From contig NC_043020.1 of NCBI RefSeq assembly GCF_006345805.1, positions 868,001-932,000 of the forward strand: a stretch of DNA of 64,000 nt, given 5' to 3'. The notes beneath the pieces are model-generated. The model made no database searches. It saw only the letters and a program-made list of their open reading frames with translations, and had not been told where the DNA came from. A program made the position numbers and the translations under genes. Each line of letters begins with the position of its first letter. Positions within the stretch are counted from its first letter, which is position 1. Shown in pieces: positions 4,336 through 61,090 of the stretch. This DNA is from Octopus sinensis. Its lineage: Eukaryota.

Positions 4336-4758
4336 ATATATATGTATGTATGTGTATGTATGTATACATGTATATATAAATATGTGTATGTATATATCTA
4401 TATATATGTATGTATATATGTATATATATATATGTGTGTATATATATGTATATATATATGTATGTGTGTGTACATATATTTATATATATATATATGTGTG
4501 TATATATATATGTATATATATGTACATATATATATATATATATGTGTGTGTATATATATATGTATATATATATATGTTTGTATGTATATGTATTTATATA
4601 TGTGAGTGTATATATATGTACATATATATGTGTATATATATGTATATGTGTATGTATAAGTTTATATGTATGTATAAATATATATGTATGTATATGTATC
4701 TATCTATCTATATATATATATATATAATATATATATATATATATAATATATATATATA

Positions 4759-4809
<51 letters not shown>

Positions 4810-6063
4810 ATATATATATGTATGTATATGTGTATATGTAAACTTGTTATCAAACCACTTAAAGTCTGTGTGCGTGTGTGCCATAATGTTTCCGCTTTCC
4901 AAAATAGCTGAGTTACTGTTTCAATCTTGGCGATATTTATTCGAAAGGCCTATAATAAAATATAATGAGTGGCACAGCTTCCTCATACACTCATTATTAA
5001 CAGTTTTCAAATTATAGCCGGCTTTCTGGCATCAATTCAGTGAAATTATAAACCAATTTTACAAGCAAGAAGCGAAAGGCTAAAATTTTCTCTCACCACA
5101 CCACTGCTACGAAGTACATTCTCTACAACAACAACAACAACGACAACAACAACTGTGTTTTATTTGTAGTAATTGTGGTTAATGATGTCACAGTAGGCTA
5201 CTAATCACACCTCGTACTTAACAGTTCCGCATTCTGCCCACTGGCAGCTCAACCTTTGAAGGTGGCTAACGTAGGCCCCGCCAATACAATAACGCCTTCT
5301 CTGTCTCTCTCTCTCTCTCTCTCTGACCTTTTTTCAGGATCGTTTTTTTGCATTTTTTTTTTTAACATTTACCTTTGTATTGCTTTAAGCATACAGACAT
5401 ACACACACGGCGCTACAGTCCCCCGGGGCTAGTTCTTTTAGTATTTTCCTTTTTTAATATTTTGCCAAAGCAGCATATAACACATGCATGAGGTGGGGCC
5501 GAGGACGGGGGGCGGGGTAAAAAGCTGCCAAAATCTCATTCATACAATAGCAAATAATTACCAATCTTTGGTCTTTCTTGTACCATTTCCTCTTGCTGAT
5601 GATGCCAGCCTGCCAGAATCTTCAGTTGTTGCCAAGGAATATTCTCTCCAAACCCTGCCATGCCTCCCACTACCCATCTTAACAGTAAAAAAGAAAAAAA
5701 GGCACAAACAAAGGGGTTAGGAATCAAGTCAACAAAAACAAAAACAGTAGCAATTGCAGGAAGAAGAATAAAATATAATAAATGTTTTATAATTGCCAAG
5801 GCTCAGGTATATGGTAAACTCCGAGTGTGTGTCTTTGAGGGTGGTGAGAGAAGTTTAATGGAGAAGGGGAAATCTCCAGATAAAAGAAGCTGCTAGCCTA
5901 GCATCTCTCTACTTATCACTCTGTGTGAGTTTTGTTACTATTTCAGAATTTTGTGTGTGCAGTGTGTATGTTTGGGTGTGTGTGTGTGTGTGTGTGTGTA
6001 ACAATAAATATCTGTCTGTTCTTCTCTCTCTCTCTCTCTCTCGATATATTTTGTTTGCATGAA

Positions 6064-7448: not shown

Positions 7449-7780
7449 CCACTGAGTGGCACCTTGGGCAAGTGTCTTCTACTATAGCCTTGGGCCGACC
7501 AAAGCCTTGTGAGTGGATTTGGTAGACGGAAACTGAAAGAAGCCTGTCATATATATGTATATATATGTATGTGCGTGTGTGTTTGTGTGTCTGTTTGTCC
7601 CCCTAGCATTGCTTGACAACCGATGCTGGTGTGTTTACGTCCCCGTCACTTAGCGGTTTGGCAAAAAGACAGATAGAATAAGTACTGGGCTTACAAAGAA
7701 TAAGTCCCGGGGTCAATTTGCTCGACTAAAGGCGGTGCTCCAGCATGGCCGCAGTCAAATGACTGAAACAAGTAAAAGAG
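7449..7780 (+). mobile_element. SINE family A, 5'-truncated
   Basis: ggcaccttgggcaagtgtc through the gactgaaacaagtaaaagag tail. Confidence 0.85.
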
Positions 7781-8811
7781 AAAAAAAAGAAAAGAAAAAG
7801 AATGTATGCAGTAACAATATTGAATTTAATCTGGTTTGCCAGCATCCGATTCTTCCATTTTCATCTTGGTTTGTCTCCATGGCAATCAACACCGTCCCTA
7901 CCACCACCACCACAACCACCATCATAAATTCCATATTTAGCACTGTAAAAGCCAGAAACTCTGCCACTCGTACTCACTAACCTCTCACGAGTATGGCCTA
8001 CCTCAGGGGATTAAGCAGTCACCTCAACCTGCTCGAAATAGAAGCCAAAACTCCTTCAAGCCATACCTTTAAATAAAGAACACTTTCTGAAATTTTAAGA
8101 TGGAATGATTACAGCAGGGTGATCAGATGATCAAATGCATTTGATCTTAAGTCTACTCAGCCACTTCTCCTTATCGCACCACCGCTAAAACCACTCCCAG
8201 CACCAATGTCATCACCAGTACTACATCCGTCATCATTACTCTCTTCCTCCATCACATGCAAAAGCATCAACCCCTTCACACCATGAGCCAATACATTCCA
8301 TGTACCGCCATTAATATTATAATGTTGTCCTTCCATAAAATGAAATTCATTGATTTTTTTTTATAAAAAAAACCCTTTTACAATGATTTCTTTATTTTAA
8401 TGATTATTTATATATTTACCAATAATTTTCATTATTAGCTTCCTTCTTTTTATTTTGATTGTGTGTGTGTGTGCGTGTGTAGTATTTGAACTAGTGCAAG
8501 TGCAGTAGTGGTTGTCATGACCTTGATAACTTCTGATGCATGGAGCGAGAGCAAAGGGCATTTAGAAATAACTTCTAAGAGATGGATATTGTATGGGGGT
8601 GAAGGAAAGGGGGGGAGGGGGCTTCGTTTATCAGTTTAGTGCATGTGAATAGTTTGATAACAGAAATACTAGATAGCTTACACTTTCATGAGGTAGAGGG
8701 CAGTGTGTAGCAGTATCAGGTGGTTGGCATCTTGTAGAATTTCAAAAGTCAGTGACATCAGATAGTAACTGGAATATATATGAAACAAACACCATAAAAT
8801 CTTTCTTTCTT

Positions 8812-9220
8812 TATTTCTTTACTGCCCACAAGGGGCTACAGACAGAGGGGACAAACAAGGACAGACAAATGGATTGAGTCGATTATATCAACCCCAGTGC
8901 ATAACTGGTACTTATTTAATCGACTCCGAAAAGATGAAAGGCAAAGTCGACCTCGGCGGAATTTGAACTTAGAATGTAGCAGCATACGAAATACCTATTT
9001 CTTTACTACCCACAAGGGGCTAAACACAGAGGGGATAAACAAGGACAGACAAACGGATTAAGTCGATTATATCTACCCTAGTACATAACTGGTACTTATT
9101 TAATCGACCCCGAAGAGATGAAAGGCAAAGCTTGACCTCGGTGGAATTTGAACTCAGAATGTAGCAGCAAACGAAATATCACTAAGCACTTCGCCTGTTG
9201 TGCTAACGTTTCTGCCAGCT
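8812..9220 (-). mobile_element. SINE family B, head-to-tail dimer
   Basis: Same structure and the same junction (gaaatacc|tatttctttactaccc, ~8995) as 1-355. Confidence 0.85.
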
Positions 9221-12574: not shown

Positions 12575-12920
12575 GTGAATCGTGGCCATTGCCAGTCTCG
12601 CCTGGCCACCGTGCCGGTGGCATGTAAAAAGCACCATCCAATCGTGTCCGTTGCCAGCCTCGCCTGGCCCCCATGGCGGTGGCACATAAAAAGCACCATC
12701 TGACCATGGCCGTTTGCCAGCCCCTTCTGGCAACTGTGCCGGCGGCACGTAGAAAGCACCCACTACACTCATGGAGTGGTTGGCGTTAGGAAAGGCATCC
12801 AGCTGTAGAAACATTGCCAGATTACACTGGGCCTGGTGCAGCCTTCTGGCTTCCCAGACCCCAGTTGAACCGTCCAACCCATGCTAGCATAGAAAGCGGA
12901 CGCTAAATGATGATGATGAA
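12575..12920 (+). mobile_element. SINE family C ((GAT)n tail, internal gtgccggtggcac repeats)
   Basis: Repeats ending aaaagcaccc, then ggttggcgttaggaaaggcatcc...catgctagcat...aaatgatgatg. Confidence 0.8.
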
Positions 12921-13116
12921 GATGTGAAGATAATCTGGTAGAATCATTAGTGCACCAGACAAAAATGCTTAATTATTTCTTATTTCTTCTGGCTCTTTAC
13001 ATTCCGAGTTCAATTCCTGCTGAGGTCAACTTTGTCTTTTATCCATTTGGGTAGTCAGTAGAATAAAGTACTTGTCTAGTACTAACTCTTTCCCTCAAAT
13101 TTCAGTCCAAAAAGCA

Positions 13117-13870: not shown

Positions 13871-14016
13871 TTTTGGAGAAATTTCTCTCAAAATTCTCTT
13901 TTTTTTTAAAATCTCATACATAAAACTTGTGTTGGTGGATCTGTGTAAAAAGGTTGGAGAAAGGACCCTAGCTGTTTCTTGCAATATATACCAATACATA
14001 CAGCTAAAGCAAAATC

Positions 14017-14336
14017 TTTTCAAGGGCCCTTAAAATACTTTTGTGGATCCTCATTTTAGTATTTTGTTGCACGGACCCCCAGAAAGTCTTATATGGACCC
14101 TCAGGGGCCATACACACCCCGGTTGAGAACCACTGAGTTAAACCTTTTTATGTTGTGCCCCAGCACAGCTGCAGTCTTTTGAAGGGCCCTTAAAATACTT
14201 TTGTGGATTCCCAATTTACTATTTTGTTGCACAGACCCCCAGAAGGTCTTATATGGACCCTCAGGGGCCATACACACCCCGGTTGAGACCCACTGAGGTA
14301 AACCCTTTTATGTTGTGCCCTAGCACAGCTGCAGTC
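14017..14336. repeat. 160-bp tandem duplication including a hAT-type TIR end
   Basis: Two copies offset by 160 bp. Each has ggttgaga(a/c)ccactg (14121-14135, 14281-14295), the reverse complement of CAGTGGTTCTCAACC typical of hAT/Charlie termini. Confidence 0.75.
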
Positions 14337-15093: not shown

Positions 15094-15255
15094 GGCAGGC
15101 TTCTTTCAGTTTCCGTCTACCAAATCCACTCACAAGGCTTTGGTCGGACCGAGGCTATAGTAGAAGACACTTGCCCAAGGTGCCACACAGTGGGGCTGAA
15201 CCCCAAACCATGTGGTTGGTAAGCAAGCTACTTACCACACAGCCATTCCTATGCC
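14840..15255 (-). mobile_element. SINE family A
   Basis: Full-length reverse-complement copy. Confidence 0.85.
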
Positions 15256-15789
15256 TATATATATATATATACATATAGCTGTACGTATTGGTATATATAT
15301 ATAAGTGTGTGTGTGTGTATGTATGCATGCTTATGTTATATGATTCAATATTCCTGATAGTTTGGATGTTGCTTTCTCAATCTACAGCTGCCACATCAGC
15401 TGAAATTCTATGATTTCTACAGTAGCTACTCACCATCTTCATCATCATCGTCATCGTCATCATTCGTCATGATCAGTCATTGTCATGGCTACTGCTATCA
15501 TCACTGCCACATCGTTAACAATCATCATCATCGTCACTACCACCACCACCACCATCATGGCCTTCATCATCTCCATCATCACTACCATTGTCATCATCAT
15601 CATCACTTCCATCCTTACTGTCATCATTGATATCATCACCACTGTCATCTCCACCACCACCACCACCACTACTACTACCACCATCATTTCGCTGCTTTCA
15701 TCATCGTTATCACAATCAGCATCCTCGTCATCATCACCATCGCTGCTACCATCATCCCTGTCATTCGTCATTTCCATAATCATCAGCAC

Positions 15790-16330
15790 CACCACCACCA
15801 CCACCACCATCATCATCACTGTTATCAGCATCATTATCATCTTCACAACCACTACCACCCACCACCACCACCATCATCATCACTGCTATCATCAGCATCA
15901 TTATCATCTTCACAACCACTACCACCCACCACCACCACCATCATCATCACTGCTATCATCAGCATCATTATCATCTTCACAACCACTACCACCCACCACC
16001 ACCACCACCATCATCATCACTGTATCAGCATCATTATCATCTTCACAACCACTACCACCCACCACCACCACCATCATCATCACTGCTATCATCAGCATCA
16101 TTATCATCTTCACAACCACTACCACCCACCACCACCACCATCATCATCACTGCTATCATCAGCATCATTATCATCTTCACAACCACTACCACCCACCACC
16201 ACCACCATCATCATCACTGCTATCATCAGCATCATTATCATCTTCACAACCACTACCACCCACCACCACCACCACCATCATCATCACTGCTATCATCAGC
16301 ATCATTATCATCTTCACAACCATTACCACC
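15790..16330. repeat. ~67-bp minisatellite built from CAT/CAC triplets, ~8 copies
   Basis: cttcacaacc recurs at 15841, 15908, 15975, 16041, 16108, 16175, 16242 and ~16312. Confidence 0.9.
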
Positions 16331-16882
16331 CACCACCACCACCACCACCACCACCACCACCACCACCCAGAGCAACCATCAAAAATATGGCTGGAAATCT
16401 CTAAATATAAGAATTTGTTAAAAAACAAAAAAAAAATCAATCTATACTTTAGGGATTTTGCTTTGTCATATTTTTGCGTATGTATGTGTGCATCTGTGTA
16501 TATATATACGAACGTGTATGCGTGCGTATGTGCACGCGTATATCTGTCTGTGTGTCTCTGTGTGTGGTGTTTCTTTAGATTGAGTTGAAAAAAAAAAGTT
16601 AAATAAAAATATATAACCTATTAAATGACAGTAGATTAATGTTATAATTTCTTTTCCTGTTTTTTTTGTTTTGTTTCGTTATTTTTCAAATTTACATTCG
16701 GCTATTTTTTATTTATTCCTCTATACATTTGTGTCTATGTGTGTGCATTTATATATATATCTATATATATATCTATATCTATATATCTATCTATCTATAT
16801 ATATATATACACACCACATGCATACATATACATTATATATGTATACATATTTACATATATACATATATAAATGCATGTGTAT

Positions 16883-16928
<46 letters not shown>

Positions 16929-17138
16929 CACAAACACATATTTAAGTATATATATGTAATATACATATATATACACATACATATATATAAACATTATAGA
17001 AATATATAGATATATATATATCATAATATATATATATATGTATACATGTGTGTATATATATATATACATATATATATATAAACACACACACACTATATAT
17101 GTATGTATATATATATATGTATATATACACACATACAC

Positions 17139-17169
<31 letters not shown>

Positions 17170-17229
17170 CACAGACCCACATATATGTATATATATATAT
17201 ATATATATATACATACACACACACACACA

Positions 17230-17281
<52 letters not shown>

Positions 17282-17869
17282 ATGTATATATGGTACTTAA
17301 GCATAAACTACTTCAAGTCTATTGGCATGCTGTATTCCCAGAGTTGATTGAGGTTTTCTTTTGTACTGAAGCAAGTCTGATTGCACTGTTGTAGGCATCG
17401 GAGTCTATTGATATTCCAAATCAATGTGAAAACAGCATTCCGACATTGCAGATATACTCTCGTGTGTCTTTTTTTTCTTTCCTTCTTTTTTTTTTTCGTG
17501 TGGTGGGGGTGGATTTTTCAAATAGATGCACAGTGGTGTTGGCGTCGGCAGCAGCGTTGGTTGTGCCGTTCTGTTTCCTTTGCAATATAACTAAAGTTCG
17601 ATTTACCAGATTTTCTGAAATAAAATGTAACAGAAACACTTCAACAATGAACATTATTAAATTGTAATCATCAGATATAAATGTGTTTGTTGATGCTCCA
17701 GATTTTTCTAGATGCTCGCTGCAACACTGGGTGACTGTGACTCAACATCCATCAGATCAACGTGGATATACAGGAACCAGTTGTATTGTCAATAAGGATT
17801 TCAAATTCTGGCACAAACCAGCAGTTTTGGAAAGGGGTGGGGGCAAGTTGATTACATTGACCCCAGTAT

Positions 17870-18145
17870 TATCCAATCATGGTCGTTGCCAGCCTTGCCT
17901 CGCCCCCGTGCCGGTGGCACGTAAAAAGCACAATCCGATCGTGGCCGTTTGCCAGCCTCATCTGGCACGTAAAAAGCACCCACTACATTCACAGAGTGGT
18001 TGGCGTTAGGAAGGGCATCCAGCCGTAGAAACGTTGCCAGATCAGACTGGGCCTGGTGCAGCCTTCTGGCTTCACAGACCCCAGTTGAACCGTACAACCC
18101 ATGCTAGCATGGAAAGTGGGCGCTAAATGATGATGATGATGATGA
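17870..18145 (+). mobile_element. SINE family C (duplicated at 19604-19885)
   Basis: gtgccggtggcacgtaaaaagcac repeats and a (gat)n tail. Confidence 0.8.
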
Positions 18146-18339
18146 TCATCATCATCAGTATTATCATCATGGTTGTCATCATACCAATTCTCAATCATAT
18201 TAACATGCAATGGTTTCTTGTACTTTTATTTTCAGTGTTCACAGAATAGCATCTCTCTCTCTCTCTCTCTCCATCCTGTCTAGCATTACCAATATAATTC
18301 TAAGATATTTACTCTGGTCCCTTTTCTTTCTCCTTACAG

Positions 18340-18520
18340 CATGTTCTACTACGCCTTCAGAAAAACATGAAGTACTTGGGCGAAAAGTAGAAAATGACAT
18401 TGTAGAATTCTGGTATTATTTGAAATTTTCCATGAAAAGAATGCGGGACTTGGCTATTGGCAATTCTGTGCTAATCAGCAAGTTGGATGAGGTTCTCACC
18501 AATGGCCTTGAATATAAAAG
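18340..18520 (+). CDS. FUT8: FUT8 internal coding exon, copy 1 (stem/coiled-coil region)
   Basis: Acceptor ttttctttctccttacag| and donor aag|gtagga; 181 bp, phase 1 to phase 2. Encodes CSTTPSEKHEVLGRKVENDIVEFWYYLKFSMKRMRDLAIGNSVLISKLDEVLTNGLEYK(R), which resembles the vertebrate FUT8 segment [29 protein letters not shown]...ADEFLLDLGHHER (recalled, not aligned). Confidence 0.88.
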
Positions 18521-18669
18521 GTAGGACAATTTACTGGCATTTCTGACTTTGCTTTCTAAATTTTTTCCTTATTCTCTCTCTCATTTTTGATTTTCAGTCT
18601 TTTTTTTGTCTGTTATGTTATCCCTGAAATTTCAATGATTACCTTGAATATTATTTGTGAGCTTTTGGC

Positions 18670-18845
18670 GCTGGAGTGGCTGTGTGGTTAGTAGCTTGCT
18701 TACCAACCACATGGTTCCGGGTTCAGTTTCACTGCGTGGCACCTTGGGCGAGTGTCTTCTACTATAGCCTCGGGCGACCAATGCCTTGTGAGTGGATTTG
18801 GTAGACGGAGACTGAAAAGAATCCCGTCGTTTATATGTATATATA
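18670..18845 (+). mobile_element. SINE family A, 5' half only (cut by the duplication junction)
   Basis: Head through the internal TA tract; the sequence then resumes as the start of duplication unit 2. Confidence 0.85.
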
Positions 18846-20073
18846 TATATGTATATATACACACATACACATATATGTATATATATATATATACACACAC
18901 ACAGACCCACATATATGTATATATATATATATATATATACATACACACACACACACATATATGTATATGTATCATTATATATATATATATATATAATATA
19001 TATATATATATGTAATGTATATATGGTACTTAAGCATAAACTACTTCAAGTCTATTGGCATGCTGTATTCCCAGAGTTGATTGAGGTTTTCTTTTGTACT
19101 GAAGCAAGTCTGATTGCACTGTTGTAGGCATCGGAGTCTATTGATATTCCAAATCAATGTGAAAACAGCATTCCGACATTGCAGATATACTCTCGTGTGT
19201 CTTTTTTTTCTTTCCTTCTTTTTTTTTTTCGTGTGGTGGGGGTGGATTTTTCAAATAGATGCACAGTGGTGTTGGCGTCGGCAGCAGCGTTGGTTGTGCC
19301 GTTCTGTTTCCTTTGCAATATAACTAAAGTTCGATTTACCAGATTTTCTGAAATAAAATGTAAACAGAAACACTTCAACAATGAACATTATTAAATTGTA
19401 ATCATCAGATATAAATGTGTTTGTTGATGCTCCAGATTTTTCTAGATGCTCGCTGCAACACTGGGTGACTGTGACTCAACATCCATCAGATCAACGTGGA
19501 TATACAGGAACCAGTTGTATTGTCAATAAGGATTTCAAATTCTGGCACAAACCAGCAGTTTTGGAAAGGGGTGGGAGCAAGTTGATTACATTGACCCCAG
19601 TATTATCCAATCATGGTCGTTGCCAGCCTTGCCTCGCCCCCGTGCCGGTGGCACGTAAAAAGCACAATCCGATCGTGGCCGTTTGCCAGCCTCATCTGGC
19701 ACGTAAAAAGCACCCACTACATTCACAGAGTGGTTGGCGTTAGGAAGGGCATCCAGCCGTAGAAACGTTGCCAGATCAGACTGGGCCTGGTGCAGCCTTC
19801 TGGCTTCACAGACCCCAGTTGAACCGTACAACCCATGCTAGCATGGAAAGTGGGCGCTAAATGATGATGATGATGATGATCATCATCATCATCAGTATTA
19901 TCATCATGGTTGTCATCATACCAATTCTCAATCATATTAACATGCAATGGTTTCTTGTACTTTTATTTTCAGTGTTCACAGAATAGCATCTCTCTCTCTC
20001 TCTCTCATCCTGTCTAGCATTACCAATATAATTCTAAGATATTTACTCTGGTCCCTTTTCTTTCTCCTTACAG

Positions 20074-20254
20074 CATGTTCTACTACGCCTTCAGAAAAAC
20101 ATGAAGTACTTGGGCGAAAAGTAGAAAATGACATTGTAGAATTCTGGTATTATTTGAAATTTTCCATGAAAAGAATGCGGGACTTGGCTATTGGCAATTC
20201 TGTGCTAATCAGCAAGTTGGATGAGGTTCTCACCAATGGCCTTGAATATAAAAG
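20074..20254 (+). CDS. FUT8: FUT8 internal coding exon, copy 2 (identical duplicate)
   Basis: Identical by eye to 18340-18520, with the same acceptor (cag at 20071-20073) and donor (gt at 20255). Confidence 0.88.
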
Positions 20255-20402
20255 GTAGGACAATTTACTGGCATTTCTGACTTTGCTTTCTAAATTTTTT
20301 CCTTATTCTCTCTCTCATTTTTGATTTTCAGTCTTTTTTTTGTCTGTTATGTTATCCCTGAAATTTCAATGATTACCTTGAATATTATTTGTGAGCTTTT
20401 GG

Positions 20403-20815
20403 CGCTGGAGTGGCTGTGTGGTTAGTAGCTTGCTTACCAACCACATGGTTCCGGGTTCAGTTTCACTGCGTGGCACCTTGGGCGAGTGTCTTCTACTATA
20501 GCCTCGGGCGACCAATGCCTTGTGAGTGGATTTGGTAGACGGAGACTGAAAAGAATCCCGTCGTTTATATGTATATATATATATATGCGTGTGTGTGTTT
20601 GTGTGTCTGTGTTTGTCTCCCTAGCATTGCTTGACAACCGATGCTGGTGTGTTTATGTCCCCGTTACCTAGCGGTTCGGCAAAAGAGACCGATAGAATAA
20701 GTACTGGGCTTACAAAAGAATAAGTCCCGGGGTCAAGTTGCTCGATTAAAGGCGGTGCTCCAGCATGGCCACAGTCAAATGACTCAAACAAGTAAAAGAG
20801 TAAAAAGAGTAAAGA
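20403..20815 (+). mobile_element. SINE family A, complete
   Basis: Its 5' half is identical to 18670-18845 and it continues through the tail gtaaaagag. Confidence 0.9.
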
Positions 20816-21208
20816 GAGAGTACCCACTTTTGTCTGCTGTAATATCATTAGCCTTTGACCCACCCACTTTTATCTGTTATGACAAAACTTTTGACCCACC
20901 CATTTTTCCATTTTTGTCTGTTATATTATCACCAGTTTATGACACACCCACTTTTGGCAATCATGAACATCAATGAACTTCCAACACGCCTACTTTTATC
21001 TGTTATTAAACTTTCAACACACCCTCTCTTGTCTGTCACATTATCATTAACTTTTGACACGCCTACTTTGGTTGGAATTTTGTTTGTTGTTTCCTTTAAT
21101 GATACTTTTGAAAAAAAAAAAAAAAAATTAAATTTACTTTTTCAACAACTGATGGTGGTGTGTTTATGTCCCCATAACTTAGCGGTTCAGCAAAACAGAC
21201 CAATAGAA

Positions 21209-21694
21209 TCTCTATATATATAAACGGCAAAATGTGTGTGTGTGTGTGTGTGCATGTCCTTTATACAAATCCACAATTTTTCAGTTAGAGGGCTCGCACT
21301 TTCTATGGTCATTCAAAACCGTCCAAGGGTGGTCGTGCACATCTTTACATTTCCCCAGTCACCCTGCAAAGCCATTAAAAAATCAATAGAAGTGACTTTT
21401 TTGTGAATTTTCTATCCAAAACCCAATCAAAATGCCTGAAATTTGATACGCCAATTGAATGCCAGCTAGCTGTATGTGATTGGTCAGAGATTTGGACAGT
21501 ACTCGCATGTATGTGCACACACAGCTGTATATGCATGCACTAGCACTATGAAATAACTTCCTAAATACAGAATTTTCTCAACACCAAGAGTAAAAGATGT
21601 TTTATGTGACGCATTCTACCAGTATACGAAGTTTGAAAGTGTTTAGTTACAAAAAATTATTTTAAAAATTTGTCGGTCAAAAGGTAAAGATCCC
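21209..21694. mobile_element. Non-autonomous DNA element with a Helitron-like left end and a MITE-related right end
   Basis: Starts A|TCTCTATATATATAAACGGC plus (TG)n. Its last ~130 bp are the reverse complement of the left part of the 54841/56618 MITE family (ends aaaggtaaagatccc). Confidence 0.55.
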
Positions 21695-23040: not shown

Positions 23041-24033
23041 CTTTTTACAGAGTAATGTAGACTGACCAACAGTGTTGTTGAGGACTTCATTTTGCAACTA
23101 CGTGAATGTAGGTTCAATTCCACAACACAGCACCTTGGGCAAGTTACTTCTGTTGTAGCTTTTGGTAGACTTTATCATCATCATCATCATATGTTTGTTT
23201 TCCATGCTAGCATAGATTGCATGTTACTTATGTTGTGTCTCTTTATAACCTGTAACATAACAGATTGACAAATAGAAACCGATAAAATAAGTCCCAGACA
23301 TTATCTAATGTCTTCTTTTTTTATGTAAGCCAGTGGTATTTTATTTGAGATAGATTTGGCTACTATTTCTAGCATGTTTTGTTGAGACTTTCCTGTTTGC
23401 TTGTAGTGACATGGTCATTTTTGCAGAAGAAGCAGAACTCATTTTAGTTAATGAACCAAAACTGAATGGGGCAAGTTTTATAATTCAGACGGGGTACATT
23501 GTAATATCTTTCGAATTTTTTTGTCTTCTTGACCCCTAGGACTCATAAGGATGAGTACACAGCTTTCATGGTGTCTATAAGAATGAGTTCAGGACATTAC
23601 CCCTGAATGGAATACCAATTCTTTGCTGGTTCCAAAGTCAACAATTTTTTAGGGTAGTAGGACAAGTTGATTATATCAACTTCAGTTATTTTATTGACCT
23701 TGGAAGGATGAAAGGAAAAGTTGACCTCAGCAGGATTTGAACTCAAAACATTAAGAGCCAGAAGGTGTTAAGCATTTTATCTGATGTTCTAATGATTCTG
23801 CTAAGTTCACTGCCTTTCGTTGTAACATATTGACTGGGAAAGAATATAAAACTAAGTTCAAAAGAAATTAATGACTGTCTGTATTGACAGAGAGCAGTTA
23901 ATTACGTTTGTAAATGCAGAGTGCAAAGATATTTAGCAAGGGTCAGAAAATAGATGATAAAATTTATTGAAACCAGTGTCTGAGTAGATGGGCTGGGATT
24001 GTCTGAAAACAGTTAAAGAGGTTTGTAAAGCAA

Positions 24034-24708
24034 GAAAAATTTTATTTTCTCTGATTAATGGACAAGGCCTGTCTTCAGAGACATAAGCAAGAGTATTTTG
24101 GAACAGGGTCCACTTTTTGGGGTGAGAAAAATTTATTTCTTCTGATTAATGGACAAGGTCTGTCTTCAAAGACATAAGCAAAAGTATTTTGGAACAGGGT
24201 CCACTTTTTGGGGTGAGAAAATTTTATTTCTTCTGATTAATAGACAGGGTCTGTCTTCAGAGATATAAGCAAGAGTATTTTGGAACAGGGTCCACTTTTT
24301 GGGGTGAGAAAAATTTATTTCCTCTGATTAATGGACAAGGTCTGTCCCCAAAGACATAAGCAAGAGTATTTTGGAACAGGGTCCACTTTTTGGGGTGAGA
24401 AAAATTTATTTCTGATTAATGGACAAGGTTTGTCTTCAAAGACATAAGCAAAGAGTATGTTAGAACAGGGTCCACTTTTTGGGGTGAGAAAAATTTATTT
24501 CCTCTGATTAATGGACAAGGATCTGTCTTCAGAGACATAAGCAAGAGTATGTTGGAACAGGGTCCACTTTTTGGGGTGAGAAAAATTTATTTCTTCTGAT
24601 TAATGGACAAGGTCTGTCTTCAGAGACATAAGCAAGAGTATTTTGGAACAGGGTCCACTTTTTGGAGTGAGAAAAATTTATTTCTTCTGATTAATGGACA
24701 AGGTCTGT
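24034..24708. repeat. 91-bp tandem minisatellite, ~7.4 copies
   Basis: Unit aaaaatttatttcttctgattaatggacaaggtctgtcttcagagacataagcaagagtattttggaacagggtccactttttggggtgag, with few substitutions. Confidence 0.95.
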
Positions 24709-25374
24709 CACTGTATTGTCACTGCTTGACAGCCAGTACTGGTTTATTTACATCCTCCATAACTTAATCATTTCAGCAAAGAGATCAATGGAATAAGGAC
24801 CACCCTTAAGTAACAAACTACATAGGTTGATTTGTGGTGCCCCAGCTTGGCCACAGTCCACTCCAATGACTGAAACAAATAATCAATAAAAAAAAAATGC
24901 ATTTTGTGGTGGAGGTGGAGTTTATACTTTATATCAAAAATTAATTATTCCCTGTAATCATATTTGAAATATAAACAAAAGAGATACATGTTTGCTTGCC
25001 GAATAAGAGAAGGCATGCTTCTGTGAACATTATTACGCATCAGTGCATGTATGATAGTTTACATGCATCAACGCATGTATACAAATTTACATGCCTCAGT
25101 GCATATGTTTTGTGTGGAACATATTCAAAGGCAAACTCTAACAGGTTTATTCTGTATGTTATTCTGAAGCCCCAGGAGGGTTCTAATCAAGCAGACGCAT
25201 GATCAAAGTAGTTGTTCTAACTGTTATTTATCATCTTGTCTTTTATATGTTTATGTTTGTTTTTTTGTTGTTTTTTTTTATTGCCAGTAGGGTGTGATTT
25301 GAGCGAGATTTGGCTGCTATTTTCAGCAGATAAAGTAACCGAAAAGAGTTTTCGCCATTGGCTCATACACTTTA

Positions 25375-25705: not shown

Positions 25706-25974
25706 CCATGGATCTCTACCATGATGTCAACTAAGAGAGCATCATTAAAATGCTACCGAAACAGCTGTTGTGAATTCAGAACACCCCTTGTGTTCTTATG
25801 TGTGTGTGTGTGTGTGTATATGTGTGTACCCCTCTGCATTGACGCATGCTATCTTTCATGCGTACATATTCTCTCTTCCTTATTTGCTCATTATCTCCAC
25901 ACACACACACATGTGTTTAGGGATAGAAAGAGAGAGATCACTGTCTGTCATACACAATAATACACTGCACATAT

Positions 25975-26450
25975 CATCATCATCATCTGCTTTCCATGCT
26001 AGCATGGGTTGGATGGTTCGACTGGGGTCTGGGAAGCCAGAAGGCTGCATATGCCCAGTCTGATCTAGCAATGTTTCTACAGCTGGATGCCCTTCCTAAT
26101 GCCAACCACTCCGTGAGTGTAGTGGGTGCTTTTTACGTGCCACCGGCACGGGGCCAAGCAAGGCTGGCAAACGGCCACGATCGGATGGTGCTTTTTACAT
26201 GCCACCGGCACAGAGGCCTGTCGGGGCGGCGCTGGCAAATGGCCACGATCAGATGGTGCTTTTTATGTGCCACCGGCACGGGGGCCAGGCGAGGCTGGAA
26301 ACGGCCACGATCAGATGGTGCTTTTTATGTGCCACCGGCACGGAGGCTCATCGGGGCGGTGCTGGCGACAGCCATGTTCGGATGGTTCACTTACGTGCCA
26401 CCGGCACTGGTATCACAGCTAAAATTCCATTGATGTTGATCGATTTCGAT
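25975..26450 (-). mobile_element. SINE family C with ~5 internal repeats
   Basis: (cat)n tail at the left and repeated gatggtgctttt(t)a(c/t)gtgccaccggcac. Confidence 0.85.
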
Positions 26451-32641: not shown

Positions 32642-32683
<42 letters not shown>

Positions 32684-32725
32684 GTCTGTGTGTGTGTTTG
32701 TGTGTAAATGTATTATGTGTGTGTG

Positions 32726-32770
<45 letters not shown>

Positions 32771-33133
32771 GTGTTTTTATATGCATATGTGTATGTATGT
32801 ATAAGTATATATATACATGTGTATGTATATATATGTATGCTTATGAGTTTGTGTATATGTTTGTGTATATATATATATGTATGTATGTGTATATGTGTGT
32901 GTGTGTATGTATATATATATGTTTATATATGTGTGTGTGTATATATATATATATATGTTTATATGTGTGTGTGTGTATATATATATATATGTGTGTGTGT
33001 GTGTATATATATATGTATATATATATAGATATATATATATATATGTGTGTGTGTATATATATATGTATATATATATAGATTGATAGATAGATAGATAGAT
33101 ATGTGTATACATATAAGTATGTGTGTGTGTGTA

Positions 33134-33174
<41 letters not shown>

Positions 33175-33757
33175 ATTGGTGAATCTGAAAGCAAATTTCA
33201 GTCTAGAAACAAGGAAACGGTTTGTCAGAATGATTCCAAACAATTCTTTTGCCTCCAGAGAGTCAAGTCCTGAAGCTGTGTACGGAAACAAAGCACATGT
33301 CCTCTCCTCTCTCTTTAGTTTCCAACAATAATCCTCGTCATCGTTCCAGGATCAATTCACTGATGGACGGACACTTCATGTAGTTGTGTATTTATTTATT
33401 TCCTATTTTCTGGGGCTTTTGTGTGTGTGTGTGTGTGTAATGTGATTGTTGTTGTTGTTGTTGCTGCTGCTGTTGTTGTTGCAAATGTTTATTTCCCTTC
33501 CAATTCTGAAATATCTGAATTTTTAAGTATTTCAAATACATTTTTTTATTGACAGCTCCACTCTAGGTTCATCACTCATCTCTCTCTCTCTCTCTCTCTT
33601 CTCTCTCTTTCTCTCTCTGTTGCACTCTCTCCTTCTTTCCCTCTCTCTCTGTATCTCCCTATATATATATATGTGTCTATGTATATATGTATGTATATAT
33701 GTATGTATATATATATGCATATATATATGTATATATATGTGTGTGTGTATGTGTGTG

Positions 33758-37264: not shown

Positions 37265-37895
37265 CAAATCAAAATAGATGAACATCAATGGAATTTGTAT
37301 CTTTGTGGTACCAGTGCCGGTGGCACGTGGCACATAAGAAAACCATCCGAACGTGGCCGTAGCCAGTACCGCATCGACTGGCCTCCGTGCTGTGGGCACG
37401 TAACAAGCACCATCCAATCGTGGCCGTTTGCCAGCCTCATCTGGCACCTGTGTCGGTGGCACATAAAAACACCATCCGAGCGAGGCCGTCTGCCAGCCTC
37501 GTCTGGCACCTGTGTCAGTGGCACATAAAAACACCATCCGAGCGTGGCCGTCTGCCAGCCTCGTCTGGCACCTGTGTCGGTGGCACATAAAAAAAACACC
37601 ATCCGAGCGTGGCCGTCAGCCAGCCTCGTCTGGACCTGTGTCGGTGGCCACATAAAAACACCATCCGAGCATGGCCGTCTGCCAGCCTCGTCTGGCACCG
37701 TGTGGTGTGGCACATAAAATCACCCACTACACTCTCGGAGTGGTTGGCGTTAGGAAGGGCATCCAGCTGTAGAAACACTGCCAGATCTGACTGGACTGGT
37801 GCAGCTTTCGGGCTCCCCAGACCCCAGTTGAACCGTCCAACCCATGCTAGCATGGAAAGCGGACGTTAAATGATGATGATGATGATGATGATGAT
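37265..37895 (+). mobile_element. SINE family C with a long internal tandem array (~8 units)
   Basis: Repeated tggcacataaaaacaccatccgagcg(t/a)ggccgtctgccagcctcgtctggcacctgtgtc, then the standard 3' end and (gat)n. Confidence 0.85.
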
Positions 37896-38683
37896 AAATA
37901 TATATATACACACACATAATTATATATATATAAATATATATATACATATACACATAATTATATACATATAAATATATACACACATACACATATATATACA
38001 TACATATATGAATACATGTGTATATACATATAAATCCAAATGCACGCATACATATATGCACAAACACATGCACGCGCTTACAAGATATTAAACTAAGTGG
38101 TAGTTTACAACAACGCCATCTATTTTGTAAGCACTTGACATCAGGGTGTGCAAAAGATGATGATGATGATAATGACAAAAACCCTACTGATGCTGCTAAT
38201 GATGATGGGACGGACATGTCTGTTGTTTATTTCCTATATATATATTTTCCCTATCATAAACCAAGTAGTTTTAAATAAGATAAAGAAAGAAAAAAAAAAA
38301 AAAATAATAATAATAATATGTCTTTAATTCCATGTGTGACTATATTTTACTTCATTCACTCTCAGTGTTGGAAGCTTAATTCCAAATGGGTTGTTTTAAA
38401 TCGGTCCTTTTTTTTTTTTTTTTGTATTCCAGTTCTTCCTGTTGTAGCTGGCTTTTTTGTGTTGCAGGATCTTGGTTCTATTTTCTTTTCTTTTTTTTTT
38501 TTACCATTTTACTGTTTTGCATTTTATTTGTTTCTCCAACTCACTGCTACCTTAGCTAGGGTAAATGGCAAGAAATTAATGATAGGTTTTGTAAGAGGAA
38601 AAAAAAAAAAACTCAAATCCATATCTTATTCTAGCAATGATCCGACCAACCACAATTGTGTGTATGTGTGTATAAGTATATAC

Positions 38684-38731
<48 letters not shown>

Positions 38732-38757
38732 CATATGTATATATGATATATATATAC

Positions 38758-38804
<47 letters not shown>

Positions 38805-38867
38805 TATGTAATAGATATATTCATATGTATGTATATATATATTCATATGTATATATATATATATAAA

Positions 38868-38910
<43 letters not shown>

Positions 38911-39589
38911 ATAACATATACATATAAAATCTATATATAAATATATATATGAATATAATATATATATATAATATATAATATATTATATCTATATATATAT
39001 ATGTGTGGGTGGTGTATGTATGTATGTATTGTGATTTACTTGGCATTGCTGCCCTTCCTCTTTTAGAAATAATACCTTAAGAATGAAATATGTACAGGTA
39101 TAAATACAGGTGTGTGTGTGTGTTTTTATGTATGTAAAAAAGGAAAAAGTTTCAATGTATGTTTGTGAAGGGGCTTCTTGAAGAAATATATATTGCAGTA
39201 AATAGAAATTATATATACCTGGTGTCTGTATGTGCATACATCTGTGCACACACATATATCTGTGCATATGTGCAAGTTCATACACCTGAGCACATGCATA
39301 TGTGCATATGCACACTTTAAAGTTATGTTGTACAAACTGCTGAATATCAAATAGAAAGGATCAGTCTTCACTTTTCAGTTCAAGACCTGCCATATTCATT
39401 TCTGACAAAGAAAATGTTAATTGTAACTTCGAAGTCACTATCAACCTTTTCCTTGTGTGTGTATGTGTTGCAGGATCTTGGTTCTTTTTCCTTTTTTGTT
39501 ACTATTTTATTATTTTGCATTTTATTTATTTCTCCAACTCACTGCTACCTTAGCTAGGGTATGTATGTATGTATGTATGTGTGTGTATA

Positions 39590-41674: not shown

Positions 41675-42095
41675 AGGCGCAGGAGTGGCTGTGTGGTAAG
41701 TAGCTTGTTTACCAACCACATGATTCCGGGTTCAGTCCCACTGCGTGGCACCTTGGGCAAGTGTCTTCTACTATAGCCTCGGGCCGACCAATGCCTTGTG
41801 AGTGGATTTGGTAGACGGAAACTGAAAGAAGCCCGTCGTATATACGTATATATATATATATATACGTGTGTGTGTTTGTGTGTCTGTGTTTGTCCCCCTA
41901 GCATTGCTTGACAACCGATGCTGGTGTGTTTATGTCCCCGTTACTTAGCGGTTCGGCAAAAGAGACCGATAGAATAAGTACTGGGCTTACAAAAGAATAA
42001 GTCCCCAGGGTCGAGTTGCTCGATTAAAAAGGCGGTGCTCCAGCATGGCCGCAGTCAAATGAGTGAAACAAGTAAAAGAGTAAAAGAGTAAAGAG
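41675..42095 (+). mobile_element. SINE family A
   Basis: Full length and close to the family consensus seen in this window. Confidence 0.9.
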
Positions 42096-44708: not shown

Positions 44709-44766
44709 ACATATATACATACATATATATATACATACATATATATATATATTATATAGATATATA

Positions 44767-44817
<51 letters not shown>

Positions 44818-44818
44818 G

Positions 44819-44927
<109 letters not shown>

Positions 44928-45599
44928 GTATAAAATACATGTTAGTATGGCTCGTTATTAGCCCCTACATCAGGCTATTACCTCTCTTACTTAACTGAAT
45001 ACTGTTTATTTGTTAGTATATACACGTGTATGTGCATGTGTCTTACTTTCACTTTCATGCCTCCTTCCCCCACCCCGCCATTCCTTTGTCTTGTCCCCAC
45101 CCATCCAACCCCCCTCTCACTTTTTATCACAAAGCAATTATTTCAGCAATTCAATCGGAGTAAATCAAGTTCATTTTTTTTCATTTCTTTTTCTTTGTTT
45201 CTTTCCACCCCTCCCCACCCCCCGCTTCCCTACTGTTTTTTTTATTTTGTTTTTTTTTTTTTTCAAAGTTGATTTCAAACTAATTGCCAGTGAACTGATT
45301 GTCTAATTAACAAATTGTTTATTGTGTGTGTGTGTTTTTTTTGTCTCAGATGAACCTACCAGGAAGGTAGTCACCTCGAAAAACCCCACCCACACCCTCA
45401 CCATCCACCCCACCCCAATCCTACCCTTATCCCACCCTCCGCTATTATGCTCTATCTAGTCCCCCCCACCTCCAAAAACATATATATAAACAACGAAATA
45501 AACCACTAAAGAATACAAGATAAGCTGTTGACCAAATTAAAAACCTTTTTCCTTTCTTCTTCTTCTTCTCCATCTTCCATCTTGCTCATTTCTTTTTCT

Positions 45600-59146: not shown

Positions 59147-59261
59147 GACTTTGATCTCTGATATTGACCAACTACGTGGTGTTGATGGCCTTGACCATTG
59201 GCGAGGGAAAGAATCGCAAGACCTGGCTGATTTAGTGCAGAGACGGTTACAGTTTTTACAG
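59147..59261 (+). CDS. FUT8: FUT8 next coding exon
   Basis: Acceptor tttttctttctgtttcag| and donor cag|gtaagc; 115 bp, phase 2 to phase 0. Encodes (R)TLISDIDQLRGVDGLDHWRGKESQDLADLVQRRLQFLQ, resembling vertebrate FUT8 [39 protein letters not shown]. It joins in frame to the 181-bp exon (AG+G = Arg). Confidence 0.92.
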
Positions 59262-59269
59262 GTAAGCAC

Positions 59270-59600
59270 CTCCGCTTTATAGCAGTAACTTTCAGCGTTT
59301 GGGTCACATGTGACCAGCAGTATATTTGCTTCTTTGGGATTTCAAGTTTTTGCCTTTGCAGAATTTAAACCGGTCACCATCAAAGCGGCAAGGCTTTTTT
59401 CGTGAGCTAGGACGGCTCTTGGAGTTTGTGGTTACCTCATTGGTTAACGTATTCATATTTGCGTCCCAACTCAGTTTTAAGGCTGACTGGACTGGAGCAA
59501 CACGAAATCAAGAACACAACGCACAGTCCGGCCCGGGAATCGAATTCACAACCTCGCGATTGTAAGGCCAACATCCTAACCACTGAGCCATGCACCTATG
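59270..59600 (-). mobile_element. SINE family D
   Basis: Minus strand ggtgcatggctcagtggttagg...gaattcgattcccgggccgg. Confidence 0.7.
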
Positions 59601-59809
59601 GACGTGTATATACATGCGTGCTGTATACTAAAATTTGTCTGTTCATAGTGGAGCGTACAATTTTGGGGAGAAAATAGAAGCGAAGCATAGGACAAGAATT
59701 GATGCGAGAAACACTCTTGTAACTAATCTTTCCAGATCAACCCCTCATCTTTAGATATCTCACCAGCCCCACCATCATACAAGCATTTCTTTACTATAAG
59801 TACCTGATA

Positions 59810-60215
59810 GGTACAGGAGTGGCTGTGTGGTAAGTAGCTTGTTTACCAACCACATGGTTCCGGGTTCAGTCCCACTGCATGACACCTTGGGCAAGTGTCT
59901 TCTACTATAGCCTCGGGCCGACCAAAGCCTTGTGAGTGGATTTGGTAGACGGAAACTGAAAGAAGCCCGTCGTATATATGTATATATATATATATGTATG
60001 CGTGTATATTTGTGTGTCTGTGTTTGTCCCCCTAGCATTGCTTGACAACCGATGCTGGTGTGTTTATGTCCCCGCCACCTAGCGGTTCGGCAAAAGAGAC
60101 CGATAGAATAAGTACTGGGCTTACAAAAGAATAAGTCCCGAGGTCGAGTTTCTCGATTAAAGGCGGTGCACCAGCATGACCGCAGTCAAAATGACTGAAA
60201 CAAGTAAAAAGAGAA
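59810..60215 (+). mobile_element. SINE family A
   Basis: Full length. Confidence 0.9.
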
Positions 60216-60784
60216 CGAAAGAGAAAAGATTGTAGATCTTAGTATAACTAATATAATACCTTCTGATCTTGCATCGCCTTCTTCATTAGCTTCTTTTACC
60301 TACACACACTACAAAACAAAACCAAAAAATCTCAATTTTCTACTAATACTAATCTGTTTGTTATTTCTTAACTGTTATTATTACTTTAAAATATATTAGA
60401 ACAAACGATATCGCACGTACTTAGGTTGAACTTTCGGTTAAATTATATTACAGCAGAAGTTGTTTATTGTTTTCTGTTGTTGTCTTCCAGAAGTAATTTT
60501 ATAAAATATACAAGTTATCACATTTACATTGTATGCAGGAACGTTATCCGGTGACGTCGCCCTCGTGTGATAATTGCAAAATGTTTTATAGACAATTATG
60601 TTTCTTGACACGCTGTAGTAGAATGTAAGGGATTTCTTAAAAAAGAAAATGTGAAAGGAAAACAACTTTTCCTGATAAGAATCAATGTGTGACTGCGTAT
60701 ATATAATATACACACGCATATGTATGCATGCATAAATATATTTTCGCACACACATATAACATGTATAAATATGATATGTAACAA

Positions 60785-60790
60785 GTGTTA

Positions 60791-60843
<53 letters not shown>

Positions 60844-60852
60844 GTATGTTTG

Positions 60853-60883
<31 letters not shown>

Positions 60884-61056
60884 GTATATATATATATATA
60901 TGTATGTGTATATGTGTATATATATATATGTATATGTGTGTATATATATATACATATGTATGTATATGTATATATATATATGTATGTATAATGTATATAT
61001 ATATGTATGTATATAATATATATGTATGTATATAGATAGTATGTATGTATATGTAT

Positions 61057-61090
<34 letters not shown>

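What the first reader, a model, noticed from the sequence alone, without database searches (positions are those of the whole stretch)
17103..20570. Very recent tandem duplication of a frame-asymmetric FUT8 exon
Seen: two identical 181-bp exons, each with intact splice sites, separated by a 1553-bp GT-AG interval. The units differ only by small repeat-length or homopolymer indels and about one substitution (ggggg/gggag). The breakpoint joins the TA tract inside a SINE to an upstream TA tract, so unit 1 has only half the SINE. Splicing both exons gives AGC ATG TTC TAC TAC GCC TTC AGA AAA ACA TGA, a premature stop before the catalytic domain. Established: exon duplication is the usual origin of mutually exclusive exons, and premature stops trigger NMD. 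Inference: a nascent mutually exclusive pair, a hypomorphic or truncating FUT8 allele affecting core fucosylation, or an assembly artefact.
Basis: partly seen in the sequence, partly recalled or inferred. Interest (0 to 1): 0.75.

Follow-up and report, generated by a model that had tools for sequence, protein, structure and literature searches.

The report
Duplicated FUT8 exon: variant or artefact
A 1.7-kb stretch holding one exon of the core-fucosylation gene FUT8 appears twice in a row, almost identically; this is either a young gene-breaking variant in the sequenced animal or an assembly error, the sequence alone cannot say which, and it is ordinary either way.

Summary
Every sequence-level claim holds. 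Window 17102-20584 is a head-to-tail duplication of a 1732/1734-nt unit: 1740 matched positions, 2 substitutions and 7 small indels, all in low-complexity contexts. Each unit carries an identical 181-nt exon (18340-18520, 20074-20254) with AG/GT borders, 1553 nt apart. The exon is FUT8: joined to the next exon (59147-59261) it gives Pfam FUT8_N_cat E=1e-16, and the top PDB hits are all FUT8. Its length is 3n+1, so including both copies gives ...EYKSMFYYAFRKT*, a stop 150 nt upstream of the next exon junction and before the catalytic domain. The junction is seamless, inside exactly 17 nt of TA-rich microhomology between the internal microsatellite of a ~420-bp SINE and an upstream TA array; unit 1 keeps only the SINE's left arm. 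A distant relative has the exon once. No independent data from this species could be reached, so real and artefact cannot be separated. My estimates are about 0.5 for a real, very young, probably heterozygous or polymorphic loss-of-function or hypomorphic allele, about 0.42 for an assembly artefact, and about 0.05 for a tolerated nascent mutually exclusive pair. That last reading has no specific support: the exons and splice sites are identical, the intron is long, and only generic SINE pairings exist. Interest is low.

The parts
17102..18833 (+). Duplication unit 1 (1732 nt): TA/CA-rich tract, unique intron sequence, a second interspersed repeat (17871-18144), the FUT8 exon, and the left arm of a SINE
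   Evidence: Gapped alignment to unit 2: 1740 matches, 2 substitutions, 7 indels; blastn 99.03%
18834..20567 (+). Duplication unit 2 (1734 nt), same content as unit 1; its SINE continues into the right arm beyond the unit
18340..18520 (+). FUT8 exon, copy 1 (181 nt, intron phases 1 then 2), encoding CSTTPSEKHEV...GLEYK of the N-terminal helical domain
   Evidence: AG|...|GT borders and a single open frame; the top 8 PDB hits are all alpha-1,6-fucosyltransferase; Pfam FUT8_N_cat when joined to the next exon
20074..20254 (+). FUT8 exon, copy 2, letter-identical to copy 1 with identical flanks of 68 nt upstream and 51 nt downstream
18521..20073 (+). New 1553-nt GT...AG 'intron' between the two exon copies, created by the duplication
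18834..18850 (.). Duplication junction: 17 nt (TATGTATATATATATAT) also present at 17102-17118 and 20568-20584; seamless, with no filler sequence and no N
   Evidence: Three-way comparison; no N anywhere in the window
18667..18833 (+). Truncated SINE (left arm only) at the end of unit 1
   Evidence: Alignment A1 with full copies; 14 left-arm copies collected from the window
20401..20816 (+). Full-length SINE of about 420 bp (left arm, internal TA/TG microsatellite, right arm); the right-hand breakpoint lies in its internal microsatellite
   Evidence: 90.9-93.6% matches to 41676-42095, 59816-60229 and 7450-7795; alignment A1
16750..17291 (.). 542-bp TA-rich array; the left-hand breakpoint (17102) lies inside it
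   Evidence: TRF; sequence
59147..59261 (+). Next FUT8 exon (115 nt, G ACT TTG... = (R)TLISDIDQLRGVDGLDHWRGKESQDLADLVQRRLQFLQ), 38.9 kb downstream; in frame only after exactly one copy of the 181-nt exon
   Evidence: tblastn; splice sites; Pfam colinearity; translation

Best explanation
A real and very young germline tandem duplication, probably heterozygous or polymorphic in the sequenced animal.

Origin (inferred): two TA-rich tracts 1.73 kb apart mispaired during replication or recombination (replication slippage or template switching, or unequal exchange). One tract lies inside a 542-bp TA array in the intron upstream of the exon. The other is the internal microsatellite of a SINE about 150 nt downstream of the exon. 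The 17 nt they share became the junction, copying the exon, its splice sites and half of the SINE.

Consequence: the two exon copies have identical splice signals and a normal-sized intron between them, so the default outcome is inclusion of both (inferred). The exon is 3n+1 nt long, so this shifts the frame. Translation stops 10 codons into copy 2, 150 nt upstream of the next exon junction and before the catalytic domain (shown). The mRNA would be an NMD target and the allele would be loss-of-function (inferred). It would be leaky, that is hypomorphic, only to the extent that one copy is skipped.

It is not a functional mutually exclusive exon pair.
For: - Clean head-to-tail structure with a seamless junction inside exactly 17 nt of microhomology, no filler and no N. 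This is the signature of homology- or microhomology-mediated duplication. [quoted passage not shown]
- The window is 64 kb without a gap and runs through six or more TA arrays of 220-640 bp. I infer a long-read contig, and such reads easily span a 3.5-kb structure.
- At most one difference (the G/A in a G run) lies outside microsatellite or homopolymer contexts, in about 1250 nt of complex sequence. That is hard to reconcile with two divergent haplotypes placed in tandem.
- A distant relative has the exon once in a 4-kb contig, with a conserved donor and a conserved 3n+1 length, so the single copy is ancestral.
- Frame and stop codon. FUT8 identity.
- Older small tandem duplications in the same intron (184 bp x2 at 91%, 160 bp x2 at 93%) show that the process occurs locally.
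Against: - No read-level or independent same-species evidence could be obtained.
- A frame-breaking duplication in a conserved gene should be selected against, whereas assembly errors are blind to function. I judge this to favour the artefact by roughly 3:1 (my estimate, not a measurement).
- All nine differences between the copies sit in contexts where long-read consensus is error-prone, three of them within 30 nt of one TA tract. This looks more like consensus noise than mutation, and it shows the region is hard to assemble.
- Both breakpoints lie in low-complexity sequence, where assemblers and gap closers also mis-join.
- Assembly technology and heterozygosity are unknown.
Confidence: 0.5

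Rival explanations
1. Assembly artefact (false exon gain). The animal has one unit. The assembler, scaffolder or gap closer laid the same 1.73-kb segment down twice, joining at the 17-nt TA string. The source could be two overlapping contig or read ends, or an under-collapsed bubble. The nine differences are consensus errors or minor allelic microsatellite differences.
For: - False duplications are a common assembly error and are explicitly known to mimic exon duplications. Examples are false exon gain in CACNA1H and the partial tandem duplication of GABRG2 exons (PMC9516828; PMC8081667).
- 'Expansion' errors also occur inside long-read contigs (PMC8590762).
- The duplication breaks the frame of a conserved gene, which errors do freely and selection resists.
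- All nine differences are in homopolymer or microsatellite contexts.
- Both boundaries lie in TA tracts.
- The private indel-to-substitution ratio among TE copies is somewhat high, 0.16-0.36.
Against: - There is no N gap and no filler between the copies; the join is seamless, unlike most documented cases.
- The unit is much shorter than a long read, whereas homotype duplications at contig ends are about read-length.
- No other near-identical duplication occurs in the 64 kb.
- At most 2 substitutions in 1.74 kb argues against the haplotype ('heterotype') form if the species is as heterozygous as many molluscs; that heterozygosity is my assumption and was not tested.
- The indel-to-substitution ratio is far from raw-read noise.
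Confidence: 0.42
2. Real duplication that is tolerated because splicing uses exactly one copy per transcript: a nascent mutually exclusive exon pair. Double inclusion would be cleared by NMD, and choice would possibly be biased by competing RNA pairings between the duplicated SINE arm downstream of each exon and an inverted arm upstream.
For: - Tandem exon duplication is the accepted origin of mutually exclusive exons, and duplicating one arm of an intronic stem is a proposed route to exclusivity (PMC6071210).
- The geometry exists here. A left SINE arm lies about 150 nt downstream of each exon copy, and an inverted copy lies at 15104-15249 (91% complementary).
- The frameshift provides an NMD filter against double inclusion.
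Against: - The exons are identical, so the two choices give the same protein and there is nothing for selection to act on.
- Splice signals and 68/51-nt flanks are identical.
- The 1553-nt intron excludes steric hindrance, and both introns are the same GT-AG type.
- The SINE arm occurs at 14 places in this window, 4 of them inverted relative to the unit's copies (a fifth inverted match appears at lower stringency), so pairing is non-specific.
- Pairing of 15104-15249 with the second arm would loop out both copies, which is also out of frame.
- There is no transcript evidence.
Confidence: 0.05

Closest known systems
Out-of-frame single-exon tandem duplications that cause disease in humans (for example DMD exon 2 duplication); from my own knowledge, not checked here
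   Same: Intronic breakpoints, head-to-tail copy of one exon whose length is not a multiple of 3, both copies spliced in, frameshift and premature stop; residual function only if one copy is skipped.
   Different: Different gene and a different animal. Zygosity, transcript consequence and even physical existence are untested here. The breakpoints here lie in TA microsatellites with 17-nt microhomology.
False exon gain / false tandem duplication in genome assemblies (Ko et al. 2022, PMC9516828; Rhie et al. 2021, PMC8081667)
   Same: Near-identical adjacent copies containing a coding exon within one gene, giving a spurious frame-breaking gene model; boundaries in hard-to-assemble sequence.
   Different: Documented cases mostly have an assembly gap or read-unsupported filler between the copies, and are read-length or haplotig-sized. 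Here the join is seamless, gap-free and only 1.73 kb.
Mutually exclusive exons born by tandem exon duplication, with NMD removing double inclusion (FGFR2 IIIb/IIIc, cited as ref. 11 in PMC6071210; Kondrashov and Koonin 2001, cited as ref. 8 there)
   Same: Same-length, same-phase tandem exons; double inclusion shifts the frame.
   Different: Established pairs have diverged sequences that encode different isoforms, and they have a mechanism that enforces the choice. Here the exons and their signals are identical and no specific mechanism is visible.
FUT8 (alpha-1,6-fucosyltransferase, Pfam PF19745 FUT8_N_cat; PDB 2DE0, 6VLD and others)
   Same: The two exon peptides match the family's N-terminal helical domain and the start of the catalytic domain, colinearly and above Pfam's curated cut-off.
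   Different: Only about 98 residues of the gene lie in the window. The catalytic and SH3 domains and the N-terminal membrane anchor are outside it or were not detected.

Membership tests
FUT8 (alpha-1,6-fucosyltransferase) | Match to the family profile above the curated threshold | tested here: met
   Pfam PF19745 FUT8_N_cat, E=1e-16, 61.3 bits against a 27.6-bit cut-off, profile positions 107-201 of 499, on the exon-exon joined 98 aa. The top 8 PDB sequence hits are all alpha-1,6-fucosyltransferase, E about 0.0025, for the 59-aa exon alone. 118 hits in the exhaustive representative search; the full-length proteins inspected are FUT8-like.
FUT8 (alpha-1,6-fucosyltransferase) | Colinear exon order and compatible intron phases on one strand | tested here: met
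   ...TAT AAA AG | G ACT TTG... reads EYK-R-TLISD, aligned to human ..HHERSIMTD...
FUT8 (alpha-1,6-fucosyltransferase) | Catalytic (GT-B Rossmann-like) domain with its substrate-binding residues, and the C-terminal SH3 domain | not testable with these tools
   These exons lie outside the 64-kb window; no further FUT8 exon was found at 59262-64000 or upstream of 18340.
Microhomology- or homology-mediated tandem duplication (real structural variant) | Head-to-tail copies with a seamless junction lying in sequence shared by the two breakpoints | tested here: met
   The same 17 nt at 17102, 18834 and 20568, with identity ending exactly at their edges.
Microhomology- or homology-mediated tandem duplication (real structural variant) | Single-copy ancestral state in relatives | tested here: met
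   The orthologous exon occurs once in the 4008-bp contig L001, at 750-923 with about 3 kb downstream. This is a distant relative in which only the exon aligns, so the test is weak.
Microhomology- or homology-mediated tandem duplication (real structural variant) | Single DNA molecules that span both copies | not testable with these tools
   No reads are available, and no independent same-species contig was found.
False duplication in an assembly | Assembly gap (N run) or unsupported filler between the copies | tested here: not met
   No N in the window; the junction has no extra bases. Read support for the junction itself could not be tested.
False duplication in an assembly | Half (or lower) read depth on each copy, no junction-spanning reads, and haplotype-specific or erroneous k-mers | not testable with these tools
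   These criteria come from PMC9516828; they need the read sets.
Mutually exclusive exon pair | Same length and phase, homologous sequence, adjacent position | tested here: met
   Identical 181-nt exons 1553 nt apart. This is trivially met by any fresh duplication.
Mutually exclusive exon pair | Diverged exons encoding alternative protein segments | tested here: not met
   0 differences in 181 nt.
Mutually exclusive exon pair | A mechanism that enforces one-of-two choice (steric hindrance, U2/U12 incompatibility, or specific competing RNA structures) | tested here: not met
   The 1553-nt intron and identical GT-AG signals exclude the first two. The candidate docking and selector arms are generic SINE copies, found at 14 places in the window. 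Only the passive frameshift/NMD filter applies.
Mutually exclusive exon pair | Transcripts that contain exactly one of the two exons | not testable with these tools
   No transcript data could be reached.

The most novel reading that the evidence does not exclude
The duplication is real, and the animal still makes normal FUT8 mRNA from this allele because splicing picks one of the two identical exons per transcript, with NMD clearing double inclusions. That would be a mutually exclusive exon pair caught at birth, before any sequence divergence. Its half-duplicated SINE would supply two 'selector' arms that compete for an inverted SINE arm upstream, as in the Ivanov-Pervouchine model.
Probability: 0.04. 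Interest if true: 0.6.

Novelty: new member of a known kind. Interest (0 to 1): 0.2.

Why it matters
If real, this is one more private or polymorphic exon duplication that knocks down a gene, which is a well-known class of variant. It would have mild extra interest for two reasons. First, cephalopod glycoproteins, including octopus and squid rhodopsin, carry a galactosylated alpha-1,6 core fucose that depends on this enzyme's reaction (PMC8699351; the dependence on FUT8 is my inference from the known pathway). A carrier population would therefore be a natural knock-down. Second, it illustrates TA-microsatellite and SINE-driven structural mutation. That the window comes from an octopus-like cephalopod is my recollection of the SINE sequence and was not tested.

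If it is an artefact, it matters only for curation. It would produce a wrong, frame-shifted or 'low-quality' FUT8 gene model, and the extra copy should be removed.

Either way it does not open a new question.

Tried and rejected
- Word-index protein search with the 59-aa exon peptide found nothing. A profile search with both window ORFs plus two relatives found only those two relatives.
- Five exact-sequence look-ups of window ORFs found nothing on record: the exon-containing ORFs of each copy, two ORFs from the unit upstream of the exon, and an antisense ORF inside the exon.
- One metagenome scan with a 42-nt exon string gave 0 hits. No independent assembly or read set of this species could therefore be examined. 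This was the main aim and it failed.
- Upstream FUT8 exons were sought by tblastn with recalled human FUT8 and with four retrieved homologues. Nothing convincing turned up on the + strand upstream of 18340.
- ARAGORN finds no tRNA-like gene in 17000-21300, so I could not confirm that the SINE head is tRNA-derived.
- I tried to infer consensus noise, and so assembly technology, from private indels versus substitutions among SINE/TE copies. The ratio of 0.16-0.36 is inconclusive.
- The top hit of the exhaustive search (P0001, 1615 aa, three matched stretches) briefly looked like a model containing a repeated FUT8 exon. It is a fusion of several whole FUT8 genes from an unrelated AT-rich genome and is irrelevant here.
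- I considered and rejected steric-hindrance or U2/U12-type mutual exclusivity (1553-nt intron, identical GT-AG sites).
- I considered a haplotype ('heterotype') false duplication less likely than a same-haplotype one, because complex sequence shows essentially no differences.
- No nested gene was found in the 38.9-kb intron; every ORF of 140 aa or more is microsatellite or TE read-through.
Full report
**What is there**

Reading 16500-21200 and aligning the region against itself with gaps shows a head-to-tail duplication. Positions 17102-18850 pair with 18834-20584, with 1740 identical positions, 2 substitutions and 7 indels. The units are 1732 and 1734 nt. A blastn self-comparison of the whole window gives 99.03% over 1758 columns for this pair. 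Every other self-match of at least 200 bp is 90-95% identical and is a SINE or satellite copy. This is therefore the only near-identical duplication in the 64 kb and cannot be chance. The window contains no N.

**The differences**

- Substitutions: A/G at 17241/18969, inside the TA tract, and G/A at 17842/19576, inside a G run (ggggg/gggag).
- Indels: TA, TA, TCAT and A, all in the TA-rich tract that starts each unit; one A (gtaacag/gtaaacag); ATC in an (ATG)n(ATC)n tract; and CTC in a (CT)n tract.
- All nine lie in microsatellite or homopolymer contexts. Three sit within about 30 nt of one TA tract. The roughly 1250 nt of complex sequence per unit has no other difference.

**The exon**

An identical 181-nt segment lies at 18340-18520 and at 20074-20254. 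Each is preceded by ...tctttctccttacag and followed by gtagga. The flanks are identical for 68 nt upstream and 51 nt downstream (family D5). Only one frame is open: CSTTPSEKHEVLGRKVENDIVEFWYYLKFSMKRMRDLAIGNSVLISKLDEVLTNGLEYK.

The identification as FUT8 rests on these results:

- A sequence search of the PDB returns alpha-1,6-fucosyltransferase for its top eight hits, aligned to the N-terminal helical region.
Four retrieved homologues confirm it.
- Its splice sites are tttctgtttcag|G...TTACAG|gtaagc, giving an exon at 59147-59261.
- The phases fit: ...TAT AAA AG + G ACT TTG... reads EYK-R-TLISD.
- The joined 98 aa hit Pfam FUT8_N_cat at E=1e-16 (61.3 bits, cut-off 27.6), colinear with profile positions 107-201 of 499.
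- An exhaustive HMMER search found 118 relatives; the full-length ones I inspected are FUT8-like.

The gene is on the + strand with an intron of 38.9 kb. No upstream exon was detectable in the window.

**Frame consequence**

181 = 3n+1. One copy followed by the next exon is in frame. Two copies read ...EYK SMFYYAFRKT*, with the stop ending 31 nt into copy 2 and 150 nt upstream of the next exon junction. This stop lies in the N-terminal domain, ahead of the catalytic domain. By the usual exon-junction rule such an mRNA would be an NMD target. That step is established knowledge applied by inference, not something tested in this species.

**The junction**

The window holds many copies of a ~420-bp SINE built as left arm, internal (TA)n(TG)n, then right arm. 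I collected 14 left-arm and 12 right-arm copies. The copy at 20401-20816 is complete. The one at 18667-18833 has only the left arm and then continues as the start of unit 2. The same 17 nt, TATGTATATATATATAT, occur at 17102 (inside a 542-bp TA array), at 18834 (the junction) and at 20568 (the SINE's internal microsatellite). Identity to the respective flanks ends exactly at the edges of this string. The join is therefore seamless, with no filler.

**Ancestral state**

The only relatives reachable in the protein collection are two genomic ORFs from Logan read-set assemblies, ERR12945500 and ERR12921341.

- They are 66% identical to the window's exon peptide.
- Only the exon aligns at the DNA level, at 77%, so the relative is distant.
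- The exon occurs once in the 4-kb contig.
- It has the same donor, AAAAG|GTA. Its acceptor lies 9 nt further in, giving 172 nt, which is again 3n+1.

A single copy and the asymmetric phase are therefore ancestral.

**Real or artefact?**

This is the only question that matters, and the sequence cannot settle it. I failed to find any independent data for this species: two protein searches, five exact ORF look-ups and a metagenome scan.

Points that favour a real event:

- The join is seamless, lies in microhomology and has no gap.
- The window crosses six or more TA arrays of 220-640 bp without a gap. I infer long reads, which would span 3.5 kb easily.
- The near-absence of differences in complex sequence argues against two haplotypes placed in tandem.

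Points that favour an artefact:

- False duplications are common and are explicitly known to imitate exon duplications.
- 'Expansion' errors occur within long-read contigs (PMC8590762).
- The duplication destroys the frame of a conserved gene, which errors do indifferently and selection resists.
- All nine differences look like consensus noise in hard-to-assemble sequence.
- Both breakpoints lie in low-complexity DNA.

My attempt to gauge consensus noise from TE copies was inconclusive: private indel-to-substitution ratios were 0.16-0.36.

Weighing these, I put a real duplication acting as a loss-of-function or hypomorphic allele at about 0.5, an artefact at about 0.42, and a tolerated mutually exclusive use at about 0.05. 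These priors are my own rough estimates, not measurements.

**How it would work if real**

Mispairing of the two TA tracts duplicated the interval between them, either by replication slippage or template switching, or by unequal exchange. The new 1553-nt GT-AG interval behaves as an intron. With identical signals, both exons should be included, giving a frameshift, a premature stop and NMD. Any normal mRNA from this allele would require skipping of one copy. The steps shown here are the structure, the microhomology, the frame and the stop. The mutational mechanism, the splicing outcome, NMD and zygosity are inferred.

**The 'nascent mutually exclusive pair' reading**

I tested what can be tested.

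- The exons are identical, so there is no isoform difference.
- The intron is far too long for steric exclusion, and both introns are the same GT-AG type.
- Following the model in which a duplication copies one arm of an intronic stem (PMC6071210), I searched for inverted partners. A copy 91% complementary to the SINE left arm lies at 15104-15249, but that arm occurs at 14 places in the window, in both orientations. Pairing is therefore generic.
- Pairing with the distal arm would loop out both copies.
- Only the passive NMD filter remains.

**Comparison with known things**

The structure works like the out-of-frame single-exon duplications known from human disease genes (my own knowledge, not checked here). 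Alternatively it matches the 'false exon gain' class of assembly errors. It is not a member of the mutually exclusive exon class as defined by diverged exons plus an enforcing mechanism. Neither surviving reading is new in kind.

**Verdict**

The finding is ordinary and of low interest. The decisive test is simple and is described under next steps.

Noticed in passing
window 15787-16344: A 67-bp satellite (8.4 copies, 95% matches), C/A-rich and reading as His/Thr/Ile-rich pseudo-ORFs, lies directly upstream of the TA array that holds the left breakpoint. It explains the strong negative GC skew at 14-18 kb.
   Followed up: no
window 24033-24709: A 91-bp tandem array (7.4 copies, 92% matches) inside the 38.9-kb FUT8 intron.
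   Followed up: no
window 8812-9178 and 14015-14336: Older two-copy tandem duplications (184 bp x2.0 at 91%; 160 bp x2.0 at 93%) upstream of the exon. Small tandem duplication seems to recur at this locus, although these could be internal to transposable elements.
   Followed up: no
window 17871-18144, 12578-12924, 25973-26407, 37327-37895, 62280-62738: A second interspersed repeat family, also present inside the duplicated unit, carries a variable number of internal ~62-bp subrepeats (2.9 to 6.3 copies in different insertions) and often ends in an (ATG)n(ATC)n tract.
   Followed up: partly
window 4336-4837, 16750-17291, 32642-33176, 38677-39002, 44711-44932, 60791-61432: Six AT/TA dinucleotide-rich arrays of 220-640 bp in 64 kb, all assembled without gaps. 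The one at 44711-44932 also scores as a self-complementary palindrome (44723-44931) in the self-blast.
   Followed up: no
L001 750-923 (Logan ERR12945500) compared with window 18340-18520: In the distant relative the orthologous exon uses an acceptor 9 nt further in (172 nt against 181 nt, three codons shorter) and has an identical donor. The exon start has shifted in one lineage while the phase was kept.
   Followed up: partly
protein P0001 (1615 aa) from the representative library: A single predicted protein contains parts of at least four FUT8 copies in series, from an AT-rich genome of unknown organism. It is either a tandem array of whole FUT8 genes fused by the gene caller or another duplication artefact.
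   Followed up: no
window 20255-59146: The intron between the duplicated exon and the next FUT8 exon is 38.9 kb and holds no detectable nested gene. Every ORF of 140 aa or more is microsatellite or TE read-through.
   Followed up: partly
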